A stretch of DNA of 64,000 nt. Source: Selaginella moellendorffii (Eukaryota > Plantae > Lycopodiophyta). Below are positions 1 to 49,771 of the stretch, piece by piece; the first letter of the stretch is position 1, and each line of letters begins with the position of its first letter. The notes beneath the pieces are model-generated. The model was not told the origin of the DNA and made no database searches. It saw nothing but the letters and a program-made list of their open reading frames with translations. The stretch covers positions 1,398,834 through 1,462,833 of the forward strand of contig NW_003314305.1 in the NCBI RefSeq assembly GCF_000143415.4, read 5' to 3'. The position numbers and the translations under genes are program-made.

Positions 1-39
1 AGTCGACGAGGATACCGGTTAAGCGTAAACCTTGCGTAA

Positions 40-235
40 CTCCCTCTAAGCCAAAACGCACCTCGACAAAAATGCAAAAAAACTCCATCGTACTGCGCGA
101 TATTATCTCTCTCACATGAAGCTGGTGAAACAGAGAAAGTTTTATGTCACGCAGAAACAAAAAAAACCTTCTCTGTGAATCCATGAATGTCGGTGCTGAT
201 CCCATGGCCGTCATTTTAACACACCCGAGGAACTG
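40..235 (-). pseudogene. Degenerate sphingosine kinase fragment
   Basis: actccatcgtactgcgcgatatt, catgaagctgg and gctgatcccatggccgtc match the intact SPHK gene at ~11790-11850 and ~12300-12320. Confidence 0.65.
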
Positions 236-879
236 AAAGACCAAGCAGGAGCTGTGCAGCTTACATAGTTTGCTCGGAAGGGCAAGCTACCAATGCTTCA
301 CTTAATAGATCCACAATAAATCGAAGTGATCTATTATAAGGCAAGGAAACTTTGTGGCCAGCACATCGCTAACGAATTCAGTAACCAGAAAAATAAAGTT
401 TCCACTACCTCGAAATTGCGATGTCTTTGTCGATCCTCATTACGAGGACCATGGCATTGTGAAGCGACTCTTTCGTGCTCATAAGCTTCATCAAGGTTTT
501 CCAAGCAGCCGGTAGTCATGTAACTTCAGAGGGTCTTCAGATGGAATGGAAGAACTACACTTAACAAAAGAAGGAAAGAGGTTTCTATCCAAAATAGACA
601 GAGACCTGTAAGGAAGGGACGTGCAAGGCTTCACTCGTGTACATTCCGCCACAAGCTTAGCACCTGGAATGAATGCTCCGCTGCTCGTAAGAGGTACATT
701 ATAAAAAAATCGCAGCGTGCTACGCGAATAGAACAGAACCAGAAAGACCTGGAAAGCTGCACTGATCGTATGTATCCCCACAGCAGCACGAAAAATAAAT
801 GAAAGCGAAAAAAGATTTCTTTATCGCAGCCTGGAATTGAGACATTTGCATCGTACCACTGCTCTCAGCTATCAAATCC

Positions 880-1750
880 TCGTCACAACCCCACCATCAA
901 CATCGATGTATCCTACTTGGAACCGTCTTCCACCGGGAACACTTTCACCTATGCATAAAAAGTCTTACGCTCTTCTTATAAGCTTTTCGAGCGACTTACT
1001 TTGACATACATGAGATACTTGGATTCCACCGCTTTCCCTTGCTGTATGCTTGTAAGCAGGGCGATGAACTTGCAGTCCCGGATAGAAATTCGTCTGCAAA
1101 CTGCTATGAAAAGACAACGAGATCTTAGAGTGTGTACCTTGGACTCGGGGAACGGAGTTGAAGCCTTCACTAGCCCAAGAGATGCATTGTGCTCGAGTCT
1201 CTTGAGAACCATGTTGATCCAACACTTAAGTCTGTCCAGATTTCAGCCGTCTCGGAGTCCCATTTCATCGCCTTAGAAAAGCGTTTAAGACTGGCGTGCC
1301 TCTGCTGGAACTGCCACCTTACTGTTTCCTAAAGACTAGCGTTTCACCAGTCGATGGGAGGCTGGAGACGCAATTGTCCCGAAAGTCTGTAATGACGTTT
1401 AATTCTCGTTACAGAGATGGCATGGCTAAATCCTTGTTAGATGCTGCCGGGAGCCTTGCAATGCTCACAACGCTATAATACACGGTGATTCGCTTTGCTT
1501 CTTGGCCTGGTCTCTGATGGGACTTAAGCAATACTATGCATTGACACTTCCTTTGGCAAACAAGCGGAGAGTGTGTACCTTAAACTCGGGCGGAGTTAAA
1601 GTCCACTCCTATGTCCTTGTATCCAGGCGCTGGAACGTAGGCAAAGACACCGAAAGTGTAGCTCTGGAGTTGGTGGCTTATTTGAGCTTCTTGAAAACTG
1701 GATTCAATGTTGGACAAATTCTGAAACATAGCCAGCACTGTTTTCATTCA
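880..1750 (-). pseudogene. Mosaic of sphingosine kinase fragments (mostly - strand; 1415-1530 inverted) with a PPR-like fragment at ~1180-1385
   Basis: Translations such as FNSVPRVQG and LLTSIQQGKAVESKYLMYVKV match SPHK 10560-10900. 1180-1385 is a diverged copy of 3478-3700. Confidence 0.7.
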
Positions 1751-1966
1751 TTCATTCATTAATTGTTTATAAGGTCTTGCAGCGCCCACCAAGAAAACAT
1801 GAGACCAACGGATTATAGTAAGGTGTTTTGATGATTTTATTTTAATGAAGATGCAACCCTCCAAATAAAGGACTGCTGTAGAATATTCCGGGAGTAAGTC
1901 ACTTTTGGATGCAGCCCTCCAAATAAAGGATTGCTGTCCCAGGCATTGTTTTAGGTCGAGGTCGCG

Positions 1967-2441
1967 ATGGAGGCGATTGCCAGGCAGATGATGGAAGCCA
2001 TGGCCAATAATTATAAGGGCGATTTTATACTTGGGAAGGTGGCCATGATTGATGAACTAAGTGGGCGAGAGTACTACCTCTTGAGCTACACAGCAAAGGA
2101 TTTGCCAGTGCCATTTGAAGGTAGTGTGGCGACTCATGGTAAATTTTTCCCTCAGGATGCAAAAGGTGTGAGGGCTTTGATCGTCTTTATTGTTGACGAG
2201 GATAACGACGAAGCCATGGAAGTGAGGACGGAGAGGGTATGTTATGCGGCTGCTCTTGACTTTTTTTCACTTTTTATTTTTTCTCCAGGTGTCTGAGGAT
2301 GGCCAAGTGCTAGAAGCTTTAAGAAATTTCTGGTTGCCGGATGTTGATTGGCAAACATTGTGTATCTGGCAAGAACGCCGTGACAGAGTTGAGGCGATGA
2401 TCGACGATTCCATTAAGAGAGGCCACATTCTTTTGTGCTAA
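1967..2441 (+). CDS. Orphan ~140-aa protein 'gene X', copy 1 (exons 1967-2236, 2289-2441)
   Basis: ATG-start ORF with an in-frame GT-AG intron at 2237-2288. The same exon/intron structure is seen in the copy at 9570-10056. Confidence 0.7.
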
Positions 2442-2466
2442 AATGCTATTACTCCTTAGAAAATGT

Positions 2467-3908
2467 CTAAAACAAAGCCATGTTTAGTTTACCTCTTGGT
2501 CTCTTTCTTCTCGCATATTGGTAAGAGAAGTTCTTCTTCGAAAATTTCAGCAGCAGCAACTCAAAGTGGGATTTAACATTTGAATATGCATAATATTTGT
2601 CTCCGCCGCAATGTGGATCATTGTCGCATGCTTCTGCGAGGGCATCGAGCCCAAGATTAGTGATTTGGCCCAGAGTGGCTTTCTTCCCGTGAGCTTGCCC
2701 TGCAGAATTCAAAAGCAGCTTAATCCAATCTCAAGGAAACAAAATCCAACCACACCTGGCCGTGGATCTCGCAGAATACCTTCGGCATGCGGGCCACCAG
2801 AACCGATAGTCAAAAACGGCTGTTCCACTGCGTCCAATTGCAAGAGCTGGTACTGGCGCGTGTTGTCTCTCTTAACAGCGAAGAGTTTCTTGTTGTCAAA
2901 AATGAAAAAGCTTGATCTCGTACAGTGCTCATCAGCCATGCAGCGCTGGAAGACGAAATTTGCAGCTGCCTCACAAGTCATGGTGACTCCATGCTGAGCC
3001 TGACTTGACATCTCAATCTTCAGTACCATTATGATGCAGCGAGCGTCACTTACGGACCCAGCAATGCCGATTTGTAGTTCTGGCTCGTCACGAATCACAG
3101 TCACCTTCCGGTATTCCCTGTCCTTCTCTTCTAGATATAGTTGGCCAATTTGATCTGATGAAATCTCCGTTACGAGACTGTCGAAAAATACCACGAAGCT
3201 CCCATGCTTGCCAGCAACCGCAATCCCGATGGTACCACAGAGTTTCCCAATTTGGAGGTCAAGAGCATCCTGGATCACGCTTGTGTAGCAGCGGATTATG
3301 TTGTTGGCTGCAACCATGTCGATGCAAAGCCCGAGCTCCTGAATCTCAGTGAAGAGTGCCTTGGCCATGAGATAGTTACCAGCGTTTCCCAGGATCATGA
3401 TCATCGTTGAGTAGTTGGCCAGGTCATGCTGGAAACCAGGGATCGTCTTGGCCAGGATAAAGAGCTCGAGCGCAAGAGATGCATCGTGCTGGAGCTTCTT
3501 GAGAACCATGTTGATCCCACGCTTAAGTCTGTCCAGATTTTCGGCCGTCTCAAAGTCCCAGCTCCCTCCTCCCTCTTCCATTGCCTCATAGAAAGCATTC
3601 AAGACTAGCGTGCCGCTGTCTGGAACTGCCACCTTATTGTTTCCCTGGAGACCAGTGCTGCACCAGTCGACGAGGAGGCCGGGGATGCAATTGTCTGAAA
3701 AGTATGGTATCTTTCTGTAGAGGTCGACAGCTTCCTGGATCCGGTTCACTCTTGTGTAGCAGGGGATCATGTTGTTCACTGCAAACGTGTCAATGCAAAG
3801 CCCGAGCTCCTGGAGATCAATGAAGAGTGCCTCCGGCATGAGATAGTTGCCGTCATCTCCCAAGATCATGATCATCGTGCAGTAGTTTACCAAGTCGTCT
3901 TGGCCCAC
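2467..3908 (-). CDS. PPR-like repeats fused to a proteasome-beta/HslV-like Ntn-hydrolase domain (exons 3908-2756, 2699-2467)
   Basis: PPR-like motifs (LFIDLQELGLCIDTFAVNNMIPCY...) are followed by CG|TIGIAVAG..FFDS..RKV..IAGSVSDA..TIGSGGPHAEGIL. After an in-frame 56-nt intron (2755-2700) comes LDALAEACDNDPHCGG. Confidence 0.75.
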
Positions 3909-5521
3909 GTAAAGAGCTTGAGAGATGCATCGTGTTTCATCTTCTTGAGAGCAACGCAGACCTGGTGGGGGTGCGTTTTCCCGCGCTTGAGCCTGTCCAG
4001 CTTCTCAACTATCTCGGACCTCCAGCTCCCTCCTCCTTCCTTCAAAATCTCGCACAAAGCATCGGAGACTAGAGCTCCTTTGCCTGGGAGTAAACCTGGT
4101 AGCACCACCTTACTGCTCAGCACCATATAGTTCCCCGTTTCTTCTGTTCCTTCTCGCAAGCTCCACACTGGAAACGAGTTCCATGACGAGGAGACCTTCG
4201 TCGCCCGGTTGTCCACTGTTACTGACAAAGGCTGACCACTGACGAACTTGGTGCGACTGCAAACCTCTGGAGGATCATCATCGGTGTCGCTCACTGTCTC
4301 GTAGTCCAGAAACTTGTCCTCGACTGCATGGACGTTCCACTGCTCCTTCCCACTATGAAGGTGGAGCTTCCGCCCGTATTCCTTGTGACTCAGGATTGGA
4401 TCCACGCAGTTGCTTTCCTGCTCTTCGGCTGTGTAGGTCTTCTTCCCGAGCTGGTGGTGGAGTGCTGCCACACTGAATCCTGCTTGGTGGTCTGCGAATT
4501 CCTGCTCTCGACTTAGTCTCGGACAAGGTGGTGGCCCGAGCTTCCTACCATGCTTCGTCTTCACGTAGAGATCGTCGTCACGGGGCAGTTCTGTGATCAC
4601 CATGAGATAGTTGTGCAGGATCATGATCATCACCAGGTCGTGCTGCATTGTCTTGGCCCACGTAAAGATTTTGAGCGAGAGAGAGGCATCGTTGAGCTTC
4701 TTGAGAACCACGCAGAGCTGGTAGGGGTGCGTTATCCCAGTCTTGAGCCTGTTATCCAGCTTCGCAACCGTCTTGGAGCTCCAGCTCCCTCCTCCTTTCT
4801 TCACAGTCTTGTGGAAGACTAGAGCTCCTTTGCCTGGAACTAAACCCGGCTGACCCTCCTTACTGCTCGGCACCATATAGTTCTCCCTTTCTTCTTTGCA
4901 TTCCTGCAAGCCCAACGAGTTCCACGAGACATTCTTCGCCTGGTTGTTCACTGTTACTGACAATGGCTGAACAATGGCGATCTTGTCGCGACCGCAAAGC
5001 ACCAGAGGATCATCACCAGTGTCACTCGCGGGAGGAAGTGTCTCGTAGACCAGAAACTTGTCCCTGACTGCACGGACGTTCCACTGCTTCTTCCCTCTGT
5101 GAAGATGGAGCTCCTGCCTGTACTGCTTGTGACTCATTATCAGATCCACGTAGTTGCCTTCCTGCTCGTCGGCTGTGTAAGTCTTCCTCCCGAGCTGGTG
5201 TTGGACTGCTACCATGCTGAACCTATCCAAGCCTGCTTCGGGGACTTTTTGCTGTCTGGGACGAGGTGAAGGCCGCAGCTTCCTGTCATACTTCGTCTTC
5301 ACGTAGAGATCGTTTCCACGGGGCATGTCTGTGATCGCCATGAAATAGTTGCCATCGACTCCAAGGATCATGACCATCACCACGTCGTGCCGGAAGCTGG
5401 AGATTCTCATGGCCAGCGTAAAGAACTCGAGCGAGAGATATGTGTTATGCTTCATCTTCTTGACAACCATGTCAATGATCTCGGGCTTGAGAATGTCCAG
5501 ATTCTCTCTTCTCTCTTTCAT
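3887..5521 (-). CDS. 5' part of the same PPR-like chimeric gene, with two ~170-aa internal repeats; separated from 2467-3908 by a frameshift
   Basis: 544-aa ORF with recurring LKKxxHDASLxLxxFTWAK segments also present in the downstream ORF, and a duplicated DDLYVKTKYGRK...WNS unit. Confidence 0.6.
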   Translation of the reverse strand: MKERRENLDILKPEIIDMVVKKMKHNTYLSLEFFTLAMRISSFRHDVVMVMILGVDGNYFMAITDMPRGNDLYVKTKYDRKLRPSPRPRQQKVPEAGLDRFSMVAVQHQLGRKTYTADEQEGNYVDLIMSHKQYRQELHLHRGKKQWNVRAVRDKFLVYETLPPASDTGDDPLVLCGRDKIAIVQPLSVTVNNQAKNVSWNSLGLQECKEERENYMVPSSKEGQPGLVPGKGALVFHKTVKKGGGSWSSKTVAKLDNRLKTGITHPYQLCVVLKKLNDASLSLKIFTWAKTMQHDLVMIMILHNYLMVITELPRDDDLYVKTKHGRKLGPPPCPRLSREQEFADHQAGFSVAALHHQLGKKTYTAEEQESNCVDPILSHKEYGRKLHLHSGKEQWNVHAVEDKFLDYETVSDTDDDPPEVCSRTKFVSGQPLSVTVDNRATKVSSSWNSFPVWSLREGTEETGNYMVLSSKVVLPGLLPGKGALVSDALCEILKEGGGSWRSEIVEKLDRLKRGKTHPHQVCVALKKMKHDASLKLFTWAKTTW

Positions 5522-5729
5522 TGCATTCGAAGTCTAGTGTCTGGAACTAAGAACTGGATAGAAACTTGTCAGTTCCCAGTTTAAAAGAAGAACGTACCAA
5601 TGCTTTCCTCTGCTAGAACTAGTCACAGTTGGCTGTGGATTTGGCGGCGAGATAGTGGAAGCTCGGCTTGTTCCTTCCTGCAAGAGGAGCTTCATGAGTT
5701 ATGCACGTCGATCTATAAGTTAGAAGATA

Positions 5730-6075
5730 GCTTACCAATTTTCTGGAGCCGTGGGAGCTCGATCTACCCTGCCTGCCCGGATTCTCAGCTGGTGGATGAG
5801 AACCACGCTCTCCAATACGACGATCACGCCAACAGCACCGCTGGAACAGTCGCTTCCACGCGCTCATGCATCGATGCTATTGCAAAAGAGGTGAATCCGT
5901 GATAATCCGGCATCCAGTCCAAGAAATCCCGGTCTAGAGAGCCTGAGCGATCAATCCCACGCTGGATTCTGCCGCAGATCTAGACAATCCCGGTGAACTA
6001 TGGCGATGGCGACCTAGCAAGGGAAGAAAGAATGTACCTTGTGGATGATTTCTCAATGCTGCCAAGCGCCTAGAA
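5730..6075 (-). promoter_or_regulatory. Diverged inverted copy of the UBP promoter/5'UTR/first-exon start (12710-13085)
   Basis: The reverse complement contains atttcttggactggatgc.ggattatcacgg, gatgcatgagcgcgtggaag, gagaatccgggcag and gctaggtcgcc, all as in 12710-13085. Confidence 0.75.
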
Positions 6076-6329
6076 ATCTATCGATCGATCTGTAAAACCC
6101 TAGGCAGAGATCTTCTTCTCCCTCGGTGTTCTGCTGGCCGTGAAGTTAAAGATGTGGAGAATATACCAAAGATACTTGGGCACGACTAGGGCGAATTTAG
6201 GCGGGAAGGGAAGGGGATATGCTCGATCTCTGAAGAGAATGCATTCATTGCTGCCACGTCAGCGTGCCGCCAAGGCACTGATTCAAAGTTTAGGGCGCGG
6301 CAAGAGGATTAGAAGGCAATGGAAGAAGA

Positions 6330-7075
6330 TGCCCCCGCAGAAGCATGTGACAATGATCCACACTGCGGTGGAGCCAGATATTTATCCATATTCAAATGTT
6401 AAATCCCACTTTGAGTTGCTGCTGCTGGAATTTTCGAAGAACTTCTCTTACCAATATGGTAGAAGGAGAATATGTTTTAGACGTTTTCTAGAGAGTAATA
6501 GCACAAAAGAATCTCGCCTCTCTTGATGGAATCATCGATCATCGCTTCAGCTCTGTCGTGGTGTTCTTGCCAGGCACACAATGTTTGCCAATCAACATCC
6601 GGTGACCAGAAATGTCTTACAGCTTCTAGCACTTGGCCATCCTCAGACACCTAAAAGAGAAAAAAATTAAAAAGTGGAAACAAAAATGCCATAGCAGCCG
6701 CATAACATACCCTTTCCGTCCTCACTTCCATGGCTTCGTCGTTATCCTCGGACGATCAAAGCCCTCACACCTTTTGCATCCCGAGGGAAAAATTTCCCAT
6801 GAGTCGCCACACTACCTTCATATGGCACTGGCAAATCCTTTGCTGTGTAGCTCAAGAGGTAGTACTCTCGCCCACTTAGTTCAAATTATAAAATCGCCCT
6901 TATAATTCTTGGCCATGGCTTCCATCATCTCCCTGGCAATCGCCTCCACTCCATCGCGACCTCCACCTAAAACAATGCCTACAGCAATCCTTTATGCATC
7001 CAAAAGTGACTTACTCCAGGAACATTCTACAACAATCCTTTAAGTGACTTACTCCCGGAATATTCTACAGCAATC
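6330..7075 (-). repeat. Inverted copy of 1870-2640: gene X copy 2 (- strand, degenerate) plus the 3' end of the Ntn domain (+ strand)
   Basis: gcagaagcatgtgacaatgatccacactgcgg (AEACDNDPHCG) and the gene X sequence, both reverse-complementary to 1870-2640. Confidence 0.8.
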
Positions 7076-7489: not shown

Positions 7490-7700
7490 AAACTCTGTAT
7501 CGAGATCCAGGAGCTCAGGCTTGGCATCGAGACGCTCGACCGCATCCAGGAAGCTCTCACCTTTACAGGAAGATGCTGTACTTTGGTTGTCAACCAGATG
7601 CTCACACCTTTTGGCCTCCTCAGTGGCGATAACCAAATCAGTATGCTCTATGGGATGATTGGGATTGCAGTTGCCGGCAAGCATAGTGTACTTACGACAC
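7490..7700 (+). pseudogene. Remnant of the PPR-Ntn chimera (PPR/Ntn junction)
   Basis: IEIQELRLGIE...GMIGIAVAGKH matches TEIQELGLCID...GTIGIAVAGKH. Confidence 0.65.
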
Positions 7701-8169
7701 TCCTGCCAGCTTTCAAGACAAAAGAAGGTTCTATCCAAACTAGACAGAGACCTGTATGGAAGGGACGTGCAAGGCTTCACTCATGTACACCCCCAACATA
7801 AATGAAAAACCTCGCTGCGTTTTACGAAAGAAAAGAACCAGAAGTAGCTAAACACTGATCTACGTATGCCCGTTGACAATTCTTGGCTAGACCAGCATTT
7901 TCAGCTAGCACGAAAAAAAACAACGAAAATGAAAGAGAAAACTTACGTTGAATTTTATAAAGAGCTTTCTTTATTGCGGCCTGGAATTGAGACATTTGCA
8001 TCACACCACTGCTATCAGCTATCAACCTATCCTTCTTGGAAGGGGATATGCTCGATGGTGCTGGGAGAGCCGGCTGGGATTTTGATAGGTAGGCCAAGGA
8101 TTGAGCATATGTGCTCCATCATGTAAGTAGATCTTCTCTTTATGGTTTTTCAGGGAGATTGATCGTTGT

Positions 8170-9209: not shown

Positions 9210-9569
9210 AATGTACTCTCTTTATGTTTATTCACTAGTAGCTCCTTCGGCTATCTAGTGAATAAAAAATCATGTTTAGTTTACCTCTTGGTCACTTTCT
9301 TCTGGCATACTGGTAAGAGAAATTCTAGAAGCAGAACGAATTACCAATGAGATCAATGAGCTCTAGAAATCCGTCTGCAAACTGCTATGAACAGAAGACA
9401 ATGCGAAAGGAGAGAGAAGCAAAAAGTATCATAGCGAAAGTTGCGTTCAGCATTGCAAGGGATAAGAAAAATTCTTTTTTCACAAACTTGCATATCAAAT
9501 TAGATGGTATTTGGACCACGGTCAACTCACTTCCAAGACATTTCTCGAGATTAGCAAAAAGATAACAAA

Positions 9570-38216: not shown

Positions 38217-38760
38217 TCAGGATTCTGGCAAGCTCCACACTGGAAACGAGTTCCATGACGCGGAAACATTCGTCGCCTGGTTATCCATTGTTACTGACAG
38301 AGGCCGACCAATGACAAACTTGTCACGACCACAAAGCACCGGAGGATCATCACCGGTGTCGGTCGCGGGAGGAAGTCTCGTAGACCAGAAACCTGTCCCC
38401 GACTGCATGGACATTCCATTGCTTCTGTCCCCTGTGAAGATGGAGCTCACGCCTGTATTGCTTGTGACCCAGAATCGAACCCACATAGTTGCCTTCCTGC
38501 TCCTCGGGTGTGTAAGGCTGCTTCCCGAGCTGGTGTTGGAGTGCTACCCACTGCCCACTGATTCTATCCAGGCCTGCTTGAGGGTCTGCGCGAACAAAGC
38601 GTTCCTGCTCTCGACTTAGTCGCGGAAGAGGCGGCGGCCTCATCTTCCTACCATACTTCGTCTTCACGTAGAGATCGTCGTCACGGCACAGGTCTCTGAT
38701 CGCAGCAATCTGTTCCTTCGTCCAGTAGAAGCGAGGAAGGGGCTGAAACTTGGCACCCAT
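38217..38760 (-). pseudogene. Stand-alone copy of the ~170-aa repeat unit of the PPR chimera (frameshifted)
   Basis: RDDDLYVKTKYGRK...HKQYRRELHLHRGQKQWNVHAV...DTGDDPPVLCGRDK...WNSFPVWSL. Confidence 0.75.
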
Positions 38761-38989: not shown

Positions 38990-41060
38990 TCAACCAGTGG
39001 GGGTGTTCTCTTTCGGTTCGTCCCAAGCTAGTAAGCTGTTCATGTCATTCGCTGAAAGAGGCTGCTCTTTTTGTTTCATTGGAAGGAGGTTCGTCTTCTG
39101 TTGGCTCATTTTGTAGATGTTCTCCTCCACGGTGTTACATATCTGGAAATGTCATCAGTAATTGGAAAACAGAAGAAACGTACGTAACTTACAATGAATC
39201 TATGTACAAGTGTCTTTAGACGTTGGCCAATCCTGTGGACTCGATTGATAGCCTGAGCTTCTACTGCCGGATTGAGCAAAGGCTCCACCAAAATAACGTG
39301 TTGGGCCTCTATTAAGTTCAGGCCATTGGCACCATGTTGAATGGGTAGTAACATGACTTGGATGTTCTCCTTCTTAAATTCCAAGATGGAAGAACCCATT
39401 TGTCTGTGAGAAACACAAAACGAGCACATGAGTAAAAGTAAAACAGATTATCGATGTTACCTGCGGTGCTTTAATCGAACCCAGCTGAGCTTGTGCTCTT
39501 CAGTGCGTGTTCTAATAAGTCCAGCACTTCTTGCCACGTCGAGAACACAAAAAATTTCACAAACGGATCGTCTTCTTTCAGACTAAAAATTCTCCTGACG
39601 ACAGCTTCAATCTTCAAAGTTGCAAAAGAATTGAAGTAAAACGCAGACGACAAAGCGAGATTACCTTTGTTCCATACGACCCTGCCACGGTTATAGATGT
39701 TTCTTCGTCCTCTTCTTCTTCCTGGAGGTTTTCCGCAATTTTCGAAGAAGCCGCTTCAGCATTGGCATAAGCAATATTAGAGACATAAGTCTGTTGTCTC
39801 GTTGGACATGCAATGCGCTTAAAATCAGCACCGATCGCTGGTGCTTTCTGGCAGTCCACAATAAGATTCAAACCTGCGAAATAAAATGAAAATTTGCTCA
39901 GGAAACCAACAAAGTAAGACACCAAAACTTACACTTGCCACAAAGCAAATGGCCGCATGGAAGGACCATTGCTCCAGATTCTAAGCTATCGTGGCAAACT
40001 GGGCAAGTTTCTCCTTCCAAACTGTTATGGCCCTCGTCCTTCTTATTCCTTACACCCTGCAATCCGGAAATGAGAGGAGCTGCGAATAAAAGAAAACTTA
40101 AGCCTAATACCTTCAAGTATCTGAGCTGCCTCTTCACACGAGATAGATTCTCAACAGCAACAAATTTTTCGTTGGTAAGCTCCGCGTTTCTAATTGCTAT
40201 CTCGTAGCCTTCATCACCAAAAGGATTGCCGTCTGCAGCCTTGGCACCTTGCAAACATAGCCTTGTTGTCGACATGCTCAGCTCGTCCAATGCAGTTAGA
40301 ACTAATTGTTGTGCTGTTGTCAAGCGTCTCGCCGCTGCATATTCGCTACGCAATGCCTGAATTGACACGGTTTGTCAAACAGACTTACAAATAAGCACAG
40401 GAGTGTTTACTTCAAGGTACTCGAGATGCTTCTTTGCGGCTTCGATCTCATCCTCCTCAAGGTTCGTTTCCGCTATCATGTATGCAAGTAAAATTTTTAA
40501 AACCATTTCCGTTTCAGAACATCTGTGCGTAACCTGTGAAAAGAAATATTTAAGCTCGACGCAAAGAAAAACAAAAGAAAAAAGTTAGAAAAACAAAAAG
40601 AAGTTGCCTTACCGCAGCTACTGCTGCTCCTTTTCTCCTGCCTGTGAACGTACTTGAGAAACAAAGGCGTCTTCTGCAGCAACAATGCCATCTAATTCAG
40701 CTGCTCGGGACGTCAAGTAAAATCGCCTATTTGCATATTTCTGTTTATCCACTAGATTGTACCTGAAACATGAGATCAATCGCACAATGAACACAAGTTA
40801 TCCCAGTGTGTCTAGGCTGGCACTGGGAACATTGTCCAGCGCGCTGCACATAATCGGGATTCGGATTCTGCATCCCGCCATCCATTTCAAGTAAGCGACT
40901 CAGTACGTGGTCACGAGTCTCATGGAGATAAGAACTTGAGGCCGTTAAGGTCGTGGTATCTACATGCTCACTAGAGTACCTTCCAAGAAAGATAAGGAAA
41001 ACATACCTTAGAACAAGACTAGAAGCATTCCGAAAGGCAGGTTCAGTGTTCATGGCATCT
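38990..41060 (-). pseudogene. 3' part of an SHPRH-like SNF2/RING E3 ligase
   Basis: CPVC..LPCGHLLC RING; GSYGTKIEAVV; LLPIQHGANGLNLIEAQHV..QAINRVHRIGQ. Frameshift near 39500, last RING Cys lost (CPTRQ), 5' half absent. Confidence 0.85.
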
Positions 41061-49671: not shown

Positions 49672-49771
49672 NNNNNNNNNNNNNNNNNNNNNNNNNNNNN
49701 NNNNNNNNNNNNNNNNNNNNNNNNNNNNNNNNNNNNNNNNNNNNNNNNNNNNNNNNNNNNNNNNNNNNNNN
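49672..49771. other. Assembly gap (100 N)
   Basis: N run. Confidence 1.

What the first reader, a model, noticed from the sequence alone, without database searches (positions are those of the whole stretch)
2467..3908. PPR-like repeats fused to a catalytically intact-looking proteasome-beta/HslV-type threonine protease
Seen: the PPR-like helices end at LCG|TIGIAVAG (Thr codon 3233-3231). The domain then has FFD, RK, AGSVSD and GSG, and after an in-frame phase-1 intron, DPHCGG. Knowledge: these correspond to Gly-1/Thr1, Asp17, Lys33, Gly47, Ser129 and Asp166 of 20S beta subunits, which autoprocess at G|T. The domain is far too divergent to be a normal plant beta subunit, and it has only one intron. 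Inference: the PPR-like array occupies the propeptide position. This could be a self-cleaving sensor-protease or decoy, or a non-proteasomal Ntn protease family not described in plants.
Basis: partly seen in the sequence, partly recalled or inferred. Interest (0 to 1): 0.88.

Follow-up and report, generated by a model that had tools for sequence, protein, structure and literature searches.

The report
Spikemoss PPR-fragment fusion to proteasome-like domain
This spikemoss gene joins leftover pieces of an RNA-binding (PPR) gene to a very divergent but intact-looking copy of the proteasome's cutting subunit. The cutting domain belongs to a small, undescribed family seen so far only in this plant, but this copy carries a frameshift, shows little selection and gave no RNA reads, so it is probably decaying.

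Summary
On the minus strand, PPR-type helices run straight into ...LCG|TIGIAV (Thr codon 3233-3231). A proteasome-beta-like Ntn domain follows. Removing 2755-2700 (GT..AG, phase 1) restores the frame and the alignment to paralogues.

The fold is not a chance match. Pfam PF00227 scores 23.5 bits for this domain and 26-30 bits for paralogues. A family profile hits only proteasome beta and HslV chains in the PDB. An AlphaFold model of a paralogue aligns to 20S beta subunits at Z 18-20, with the family Thr on Thr1.

The window is Selaginella moellendorffii scaffold GL377609.1. An exhaustive phmmer search found real relatives only in this species. Non-fused paralogues evolve at dN/dS 0.17, so the family is functional. 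I found no paper on it.

This copy looks poor:
- A 19-nt deletion near 3899 frameshifts the N-terminal array.
- The array is a tandem mosaic of truncated PPR heads plus an unrelated fragment, and its size differs between haplotypes.
- Ntn dN/dS against the sister copy is 0.7.
- Neighbouring copies are pseudogenes.
- Two RNA-seq runs gave no reads or junctions on the Ntn exons.

The sensor-protease or decoy idea is unsupported here. The undescribed plant Ntn family idea is supported. The scan had already noted the sister copy and the other haplotype.

The parts
3887..5521 (-). Upstream 544-aa ORF of the same gene (ATG at 5521). It holds tandem units, each a truncated PPR-gene head plus an unrelated ~170-aa fragment. 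The JGI 971-aa model starts here.
   Evidence: Pfam finds nothing significant in it. The fragment has a 62%-identical relative at window 38220-38760(-).
3890..3908 (-). Frameshift point. This copy lacks 19 nt here relative to the sister copy and to its own repeat unit, which splits the long ORF into 5521..3887 and 3908..2709.
   Evidence: 19-nt gap in the window at ~3899; the other indels are 9 nt and in frame. The sister copy has one 920-aa ORF. No clean splice bridges the shift.
3237..3908 (-). Two PPR-head units in the Ntn frame. The first in-frame ATG is at 3875-3873. The second unit ends in helix B of a PPR motif, directly before Gly-1.
   Evidence: Pfam PPR E 1.2e-8, 3 stretches.
3231..3236 (-). 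Gly-1/Thr1 codons (..LCG|TIGIAV), the predicted autoprocessing site.
   Evidence: GTIG is invariant in the family. In the model of paralogue P0005, the family Thr aligns to residue 1 of mature beta5i, HslV, BPH and Anbu.
2756..3233 (-). Ntn domain, exon 1. Asp17-equivalent at 3182-3180, Lys33-equivalent at 3107-3105, Gly47-equivalent at 3059-3057, Ser129-equivalent at 2801-2799.
   Evidence: Pfam PF00227 E 5e-5; profile alignment; coordinates.
2700..2755 (-). Putative 56-nt GT..AG phase-1 intron. It contains an in-frame stop if retained. It is identical in the three fused copies held here (window, sister copy, P0001 locus), a remnant survives in the pseudogene copy, and it is absent from non-fused paralogues. 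Not confirmed by RNA.
   Evidence: no joints.
2467..2699 (-). Ntn domain, exon 2. Contains LGLD..AC..DPHCGG (Asp166-equivalent at 2619-2617; Cys in place of Ser169 at 2610-2608) and the family C-terminal motif NFSYQYARR. Stop codon at 2469-2467.
6328..6469 (+). Decayed inverted fragment of the Ntn 3' end, 83% aa identity.
7493..7747 (+). Decayed fragment of the PPR/Ntn junction. It reads ..GMIGIAVAGKH.., so the Thr is lost.
9262..9324 (-). Short fragment of the Ntn C-terminus.

Best explanation
The locus is one of two convergent paralogous copies, about 10 kb apart on Selaginella moellendorffii scaffold GL377609.1, of a young chimeric gene.

**C-terminal ~240 aa.** This is a complete member of a proteasome-beta-like threonine Ntn-hydrolase family found so far only in S. 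moellendorffii. The family is kept by purifying selection. It conserves Gly-1/Thr1, Asp17, Lys33, Gly47, Ser129 and Asp/Asn166, and has Cys in place of Ser169.

**Inferred mechanism.** As in 20S beta subunits, family members are made as precursors with an N-terminal extension of 17 to ~400 aa. They cut themselves at Gly|Thr to expose Thr1 as the nucleophile, and they act outside the 20S particle.

**This sub-lineage.** The original N-terminal extension was replaced, up to about two residues before Thr1, by tandemly amplified fragments of a P-class PPR gene head and of another gene. These fragments supply a start codon and a long 'propeptide' but not a working PPR tract.

**This copy.** It has a 19-nt frameshift in that array, shows relaxed constraint and gave no RNA signal. 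It is most likely a decaying or silent duplicate. At best it could yield a ~450-aa protein (two PPR heads plus the Ntn domain) from the internal ATG at 3875.

**Shown:** fold, family membership, residue conservation, frameshift, haplotype variation, selection values. **Inferred:** autoprocessing, protease activity, the intron, non-function of this copy.
For: **Identity of the locus.**
- Window 1-5590 is 100% identical to GL377609.1, and the gene is the JGI 971-aa model.
- Allele P0001 of the sister copy is 97% identical in the Ntn domain.

**Fold.**
- PF00227 scores 23.5 bits here and 26-30 bits in paralogues.
- NCBIfam's best match is archaeal beta, E 1.4e-6.
- All 30 hits of the family profile against the PDB are proteasome beta or HslV chains.
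- The AlphaFold model of paralogue P0005 has pLDDT 77 and pTM 0.80.
- Foldseek's top 500 hits all have probability 1.0, and the 50 listed are all proteasome subunits, HslV or Anbu.
- VIA-align gives Z 18.4-19.8 to 20S beta subunits, with the family Thr on Thr1. The best Ntn hydrolase outside the proteasome group scores Z 11.6.

**Family.**
- Exhaustive phmmer over 1.84 billion representatives gives 9 hits. Seven are S. moellendorffii proteins. The other two (a Bartonella adhesin and an unnamed ENA protein) I take for repetitive-sequence artefacts.
- Further family members turned up.
- The genes lie on Mb-scale scaffolds among ordinary plant genes.
- Non-fused paralogues give dN/dS 0.17.
- The invariant columns are the catalytic and core motifs.

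**Chimera and decay.**
- 19-nt frameshift relative to the sister copy's 920-aa ORF.
- The array collapses to one unit in the other haplotype.
- The array's non-PPR segment has a relative at 38.2-38.8 kb of the window.
- dN/dS is 0.71 for the Ntn domain, 0.67 for the array and 0.54 overall.
- Neighbouring copies carry stops and frameshifts.
- Two raw RNA-seq runs gave no reads on 2467-3211 and no joints.
Against: - The Ntn ORF of this copy is fully intact over 243 codons, although it is only 37-40% identical to its paralogues. The neighbouring pseudogene of the same sub-lineage has several stops. So this copy was under selection for most of its history and may still be.
- The PPR units next to the Ntn domain give dN/dS 0.16 (5 syn, 3 nonsyn), and the whole gene gives 0.54 with p 0.025 for an excess of synonymous changes.
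- The other indels between the two copies are in frame.
- Only about 12% of each of two RNA runs was read, from unknown tissues. One run of unrecorded type holds low-depth contigs at 2793-3102.
- The selection estimates for the Ntn domain rest on 14 differences.
Confidence: 0.68

Rival explanations
1. One reading: a functional fusion zymogen. The PPR-derived array is a real, selected pro-region (sensor, decoy or targeting part), removed by autoprocessing at Gly|Thr to activate a threonine protease.
For: - The catalytic residues and Gly-1 are intact.
- The sister copy keeps one uninterrupted 920-aa ORF through the array into the Ntn domain.
- Two of three indels between the copies are in frame.
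- dN/dS is 0.16 for the PPR units and 0.54 overall, p 0.025.
- All family members carry some N-terminal extension before GT.
Against: - This copy is frameshifted.
- The array varies from 1 to 3 or more units between haplotypes.
- Each unit has only 1-2 PPR motifs plus unrelated sequence, too few for RNA binding as known for PPR proteins (general knowledge of PPR tracts).
- Array dN/dS is 0.67 and Ntn dN/dS is 0.71.
- There is no RNA support.
Confidence: 0.17
2. The whole gene is passive cargo: gene fragments captured and amplified by a transposon (Helitron or Pack-MULE style), with no function of its own and ORFs that persist only because the fragments are young.
For: - The N-terminal array is a mosaic of fragments from at least two genes.
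- RNA reads from other loci match parts of the array at 95-99% and then run off into unlike sequence.
- The locus is a 5.6-kb inverted duplication with scattered fragments.
- Other notes of this scan place Helitrons at 24-36 kb of the window (untested here).
Against: - The Ntn part is a whole domain, not a fragment. It is only 37-40% identical to every other family member, so it is not a recent capture and has stayed open over a long divergence.
- I looked for no transposon ends around the gene, so none supports this reading.
Confidence: 0.1
3. The proteasome likeness is a chance match and the ORF is not a real domain.
For: The single-sequence Pfam score is only just above the cut-off (23.5 against 22.4 bits). 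phmmer against PDB sequences finds nothing relevant.
Against: - Paralogues score higher.
- The profile's PDB hits are proteasome beta and HslV chains only.
- Structure searches give Z about 19-20 over about 188 residues.
- The conserved columns coincide with the catalytic residues.
Confidence: 0.02

Closest known systems
20S proteasome beta subunits (Pfam PF00227; archaeal beta, eukaryotic beta5 type)
   Same: - Same Ntn alpha-beta-beta-alpha fold. In the model of paralogue P0005, VIA-align gives Z 18.4-19.8, rmsd about 3 A and 184-188 aligned residues.
- Gly-1/Thr1, Asp17, Lys33, Gly47, Ser129 and Asp166 equivalents are present.
- An N-terminal extension ends at Gly|Thr, as a propeptide does.
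- Two paralogues even have His-Gly|Thr.
   Different: - Sequence likeness is only at profile level: E 4e-4 to archaeal beta and 0.02 to beta5.
- It is not an orthologue of beta1-7. No plant beta subunit reached E<=0.001 in the exhaustive search.
- Ser169 is replaced by Cys throughout the family.
- There are insertions between Asp17 and Lys33, a family-specific C-terminal motif (NFSxQYxRR) and tails, and N-terminal extensions of up to about 400 aa.
- The family is found in one species so far. No alpha-type partner is known.
HslV (ClpQ), Anbu and BPH: stand-alone proteasome homologues of prokaryotes
   Same: Stand-alone beta-like subunits outside the 20S particle. Structural matches: Anbu Z 17.9, HslV Z 15.7, BPH Z 15.1. 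NCBIfam HslV models hit two family members at E about 6e-6.
   Different: - All scores are far below the family cut-offs.
- HslV starts at Thr directly after Met and is about 175 aa. This family is about 225 aa plus long extensions.
- This is a eukaryotic nuclear gene family among plant genes.
- The 2021 survey of proteasome homologues limits the new groups to prokaryotes and phages (PMC8665760).
P-class pentatricopeptide repeat (PPR) proteins
   Same: The units carry bona fide PPR motifs (Pfam PPR 35 bits, cut-off 25). By my own knowledge of the family, they also carry the typical N-terminal 'head' of P-class PPR genes.
   Different: There are only 1-2 motifs per unit, truncated, interleaved with an unrelated fragment and tandemly repeated. 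There is no long contiguous PPR tract.

Membership tests
Proteasome-like Ntn hydrolases (Pfam PF00227 superfamily) | Sequence match to the family profile at or above the curated cut-off | tested here: met
   23.5 bits against a 22.4 cut-off for window:2757-3233:-. Paralogues score 26.1-29.9 bits. The whole 384-aa ORF scores 21.3 bits, just below.
Proteasome-like Ntn hydrolases (Pfam PF00227 superfamily) | Four-layer alpha-beta-beta-alpha Ntn fold with the nucleophile at the start of strand 1 | tested here: met
   The model of paralogue P0005 (pLDDT 77) gives Z 19.8 to beta5i, with model residue 3 (Thr) on chain residue 1. The model of allele P0001 (pLDDT 60) also hits only proteasome subunits and HslV among the listed matches. 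The window's own spliced product was not folded because it has no reference.
Proteasome-like Ntn hydrolases (Pfam PF00227 superfamily) | Catalytic set: Thr1, Asp/Glu17, Lys33, Ser129, Asp166, Ser169 | tested here: inconclusive
   Thr1, Asp17, Lys33, Gly47, Ser129 and Asp166 equivalents are present in the window gene. Ser169 is Cys in every family member. Activity is untested.
Eukaryotic 20S beta subunit (beta1-beta7 orthologue) | Orthology to one of the seven conserved eukaryotic beta subunits | tested here: not met
   Exhaustive phmmer finds no plant or other eukaryotic beta subunit at E<=0.001. The profile's E to beta5/beta6 is 0.01-0.05, weaker than to archaeal beta. No tree was built because I had no outgroup sequences.
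Eukaryotic 20S beta subunit (beta1-beta7 orthologue) | Assembly into the 20S core particle | not testable with these tools
   Needs biochemistry or proteomics.
HslV | About 175-aa protein starting Met-Thr, scoring above the HslV equivalog cut-off, partnered with HslU | tested here: not met
   NCBIfam HslV models hit only 2 of 5 members, at E about 6e-6 to 2e-5. Long N-terminal extensions are present. The partner was not examined.
PPR protein (functional RNA-binding tract) | PPR motifs detected | tested here: met
   PF01535 E 1.2e-8, 3 stretches.
PPR protein (functional RNA-binding tract) | Long uninterrupted tandem array of 35-aa motifs | tested here: not met
   There are only isolated 1-2 motif heads, separated by about 100-170 aa of other sequence.
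Autoprocessing zymogen (propeptide removed at Gly-1|Thr1) | Cleavage at Gly|Thr that depends on Thr1 | not testable with these tools
   Only the site and residues are conserved: GTIG is invariant.

The most novel reading that the evidence does not exclude
The divergent Ntn domain is a portable C-terminal module in Selaginella. It can sit behind almost any polypeptide and cuts itself free at Gly|Thr, releasing the upstream partner and an active threonine protease.

The PPR-fragment array here would be one carrier. Other carriers are listed only in other notes of this scan, which I did not test: fumarase, a TOM2A-like membrane protein, an ADP/ATP carrier and Cys-rich repeats.

That would make it a plant counterpart of Hedgehog/Hint-type self-cleaving modules, built on the proteasome fold.
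Probability: 0.2. Interest if true: 0.8.

Novelty: new variant of a known kind. Interest (0 to 1): 0.45.

Why it matters
Apart from organellar HslV, stand-alone proteasome homologues (Anbu, BPH, connectase and the newer groups) are described as prokaryotic or phage proteins (PMC8665760). A nuclear family in a land plant that is under purifying selection, keeps the catalytic residues and carries long, variable N-terminal extensions ending at Gly|Thr would be a new branch of that superfamily. It would also give a natural system for asking what a beta-type subunit does outside the 20S particle.

This particular locus matters less. It shows how such a domain acquires new N-terminal partners by local duplication and fragment amplification, and how quickly such fusions decay.

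Tried and rejected
- **phmmer of the domain against PDB sequences** gave only an irrelevant LSm hit at E 0.9. The family profile was needed.
- **Word-seeded searches** found only S. moellendorffii proteins and failed to retrieve the 971-aa and 999-aa models of the fused genes.
- **RNA support** gave no usable reads on the Ntn exons and no joints. Reads at 3212-3340, 3668-3781 and 5264-5605 carry fixed mismatches and run off into unlike sequence. The loose end at 3340 matches the neighbouring pseudogene locus, so those reads come from other loci.
- **A splice to bridge the 19-nt frameshift.** Only weak GT..AG pairs without a pyrimidine tract fit the frames, so I do not accept the ab initio JGI bridge.
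- **A PPR motif in the N-terminus of paralogue P0008.** I thought I saw one; Pfam and BLAST do not support it.
- **First AlphaFold model (allele P0001).** Poor after residue 147, pLDDT 60. P0001 carries the JGI mis-splice, which drops 8 residues, and that may be the cause. I used a paralogue for the second model.
- **Contamination as the source of the family** is rejected. All loci sit on Mb-scale scaffolds among plant genes, in both haplotypes.
- **Not done.** The window's own spliced protein was not folded or searched as one piece, because it has no reference.

Full report
**What is in the sequence.** On the minus strand a 399-aa ORF runs 3908..2709. Removing 2755-2700 (GT..AG, 56 nt, phase 1) joins it in frame to 2699..2467, giving a 461-aa product. 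The N-terminal 225 residues hold two units with PPR motifs (Pfam PF01535, E 1.2e-8, 35 bits, cut-off 25). The second unit ends in ..LCG, followed directly by TIGIAV, with the Thr codon at 3233-3231. The remainder matches Pfam Proteasome PF00227 at 23.5 bits (cut-off 22.4).

**Where it comes from.** Window 1-5590 is 100% identical to Selaginella moellendorffii scaffold GL377609.1. There the gene is a 971-aa JGI model spanning window 5521-2319. A sister copy with a single 920-aa ORF lies convergently about 10 kb before the window start and is 96.4% identical in DNA. This scan noted it earlier as s1-395659. On the other haplotype (GL377567.1), P0001 (SELMODRAFT_404515, 396 aa) is the allele of that sister copy. 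It differs from the sister at one codon in the compared region, while the window copy differs from both at the same 12 codons.

**Is the domain really proteasome-like?** Yes.
- Paralogues score 26-30 bits on PF00227.
- NCBIfam's best match is archaeal beta at E 1.4e-6, then HslV.
- A five-sequence family profile hits 30 PDB sequences, all proteasome beta or HslV. The best is archaeal beta at E 4e-4, aligned end to end.
- That alignment places the family's GT on Gly-1/Thr1, FDS on residue 17, KK on Lys33, AG on Gly47, GSG on 128-130 and D..CGG on Asp166..Ser169-Gly170. Ser169 is therefore Cys in this family.
- The AlphaFold model of allele P0001 was mediocre (pLDDT 60). P0001 follows the JGI mis-splice that drops 8 residues, which may explain the poor C-terminal part. 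Foldseek still listed only proteasome subunits and HslV.
- The model of paralogue P0005 is good (pLDDT 77, pTM 0.80). Foldseek's top 500 hits all have probability 1.0, and the 50 listed are proteasome subunits, HslV or Anbu.
- VIA-align over 48,161 chains gives Z 18.4-19.8 to 20S beta subunits (rmsd about 3 A, 184-188 residues). Anbu scores 17.9, HslV 15.7, BPH 15.1 and the best other Ntn hydrolase 11.6. The family Thr aligns to residue 1 of the mature chains.
- The ESM Atlas fold search and feature search also point to proteasome-domain clusters.

**A family found only in this species.** Exhaustive phmmer over 1.84 billion representatives found nine proteins at E<=0.001. Seven are from S. moellendorffii. 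I take the other two, a Bartonella adhesin and an unnamed ENA protein with unrelated Pfam hits, for repetitive-sequence artefacts.

The real relatives are 36-40% identical. They are LOC112344941, LOC9635678, SELMODRAFT_403023/422680 and their alleles on the second haplotype. They sit on Mb-scale scaffolds among ordinary plant genes. All have GTIG preceded by an extension of 17 to about 400 aa that carries no known domain. In all of them the Ntn domain is encoded without an intron.

Two non-fused paralogues that are 70% identical give dN/dS 0.17 (84.5 synonymous and 77.5 non-synonymous differences). The family is therefore maintained by selection. The invariant columns are the catalytic and core motifs.

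I found no paper naming these genes. The 2021 survey of proteasome homologues says the new groups are limited to prokaryotes and phages (PMC8665760).

**The 'PPR array'.** Upstream of 3908, a 544-aa ORF (5521..3887) belongs to the same gene. It repeats a unit made of a PPR-gene head plus an unrelated segment of about 170 aa. That segment has a 62%-identical relative at 38.2-38.8 kb of the window and no Pfam match.
- The window copy lacks 19 nt near 3899 relative to the sister copy, which shifts the frame. The other two indels between the copies are 9 nt each.
- I found no convincing splice that bridges the shift.
- On the other haplotype the array is collapsed to a single unit within one continuous ORF.
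- The region ahead of Thr1 is thus structurally unstable. It is not a PPR tract in the functional sense.

**Selection and decay in the fused sub-lineage.**
- Window copy against sister copy gives dN/dS 0.67 for the array, 0.16 for the two PPR units next to the Ntn domain (5 syn, 3 nonsyn), 0.71 for the Ntn domain (4 syn, 10 nonsyn) and 0.54 overall (p 0.025 for excess synonymous change).
- Against P0001 the value is 0.64.
- The neighbouring copy on the other haplotype (SELMODRAFT_404514) has stops, frameshifts and deletions but keeps a remnant of the 56-nt segment. SELMODRAFT_420043 and 420040 on this scaffold are annotated only as short fragments of the same junction. The window also holds fragments at 6328-6469, 7493-7747 and 9262-9324.
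- In contrast, the window's Ntn ORF is fully open although it is only about 38% identical to the other subfamilies. It was therefore constrained for most of its history.

**The intron.** The 56-nt segment is identical in the three fused copies I hold and absent from non-fused paralogues. Removing it exactly restores the alignment ILxxPxxG|QxHG. If the segment is retained, a stop at 2711-2709 truncates the domain before Asp166. I rate it a probable gained intron, but no read spans it.

**Expression.** In about 12% of each of two raw RNA-seq runs with this species label, no read lay on 2414-3097, only stray depth (0.58) reached 3098-3211, and no joint was seen.
- Reads at 3212-3340, 3668-3781 and 5264-5605 carry fixed mismatches and run off into unlike sequence.
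- The loose end at 3340 matches the neighbouring pseudogene locus.
- Two small runs of unrecorded type hold low-depth contigs at 2793-3102 and 2300-2544. The latter continues into the neighbouring plus-strand gene.
- Expression of this copy is therefore unshown.

**Verdict.**
- The sensor-protease or decoy reading is not supported for this locus.
- The most likely account is a young chimera. A family member's N-terminal extension was replaced by amplified gene fragments, and this copy is frameshifted, weakly constrained and apparently silent.
- Autoprocessing and protease activity are inferences from conserved residues.
- Other notes of this scan report similar domains behind fumarase, a TOM2A-like protein, an ADP/ATP carrier and Cys-rich repeats in the same genome. 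I could not test those. If they hold, the variable-partner pattern would be the more interesting story.

Noticed in passing
window 1967-2296 (+), mirrored at 6477-6905 (-): A 109-aa ORF with no Pfam match (JGI 140-aa model) lies tail to tail with the chimeric gene and is duplicated with it. A contig from a run of unrecorded type spans about 2026-2544, so its transcript, if the run is RNA, would overlap the 3' end of the Ntn gene in antisense.
   Followed up: partly
window 38220-38760 (-): An ORF (136 aa plus a continuation in another frame) is 62% identical to the non-PPR segment of the array. It has no Pfam match and lies next to a SNF2/RING-type helicase-like ORF at 39106-40368.
   Followed up: partly
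P0006 / P0012 / P0015 / P0017 (other scaffolds; loci L004, L007): The non-fused paralogues also carry tandem repeats of about 30 aa (..LLLPSFKWQSQE.YNIS..G.NVPLDGA..) in the extension ahead of Gly|Thr. Repeat amplification ahead of Thr1 therefore recurs in this family.
   Followed up: no
L005 10001-10571 and L001 13503-14428: The decayed PPR/Ntn junction copy on the other haplotype (SELMODRAFT_404514, L001) has stops. A copy of this kind appears to be transcribed: RNA reads at about 11x depth lie on window 3212-3340 with four fixed mismatches, and their loose ends match the sequence upstream of the L001 copy. SELMODRAFT_420043 (L005) is the corresponding fragment on this scaffold.
   Followed up: partly
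window 49672-49771: A run of 100 N (assembly gap).
   Followed up: no
window 1-6851 against L005 542-6100: The two chimeric genes lie in a 5.6-kb inverted duplication (96.4% identity). It flanks about 9 kb that holds a cytochrome P450 gene and the pseudogene fragments.
   Followed up: partly
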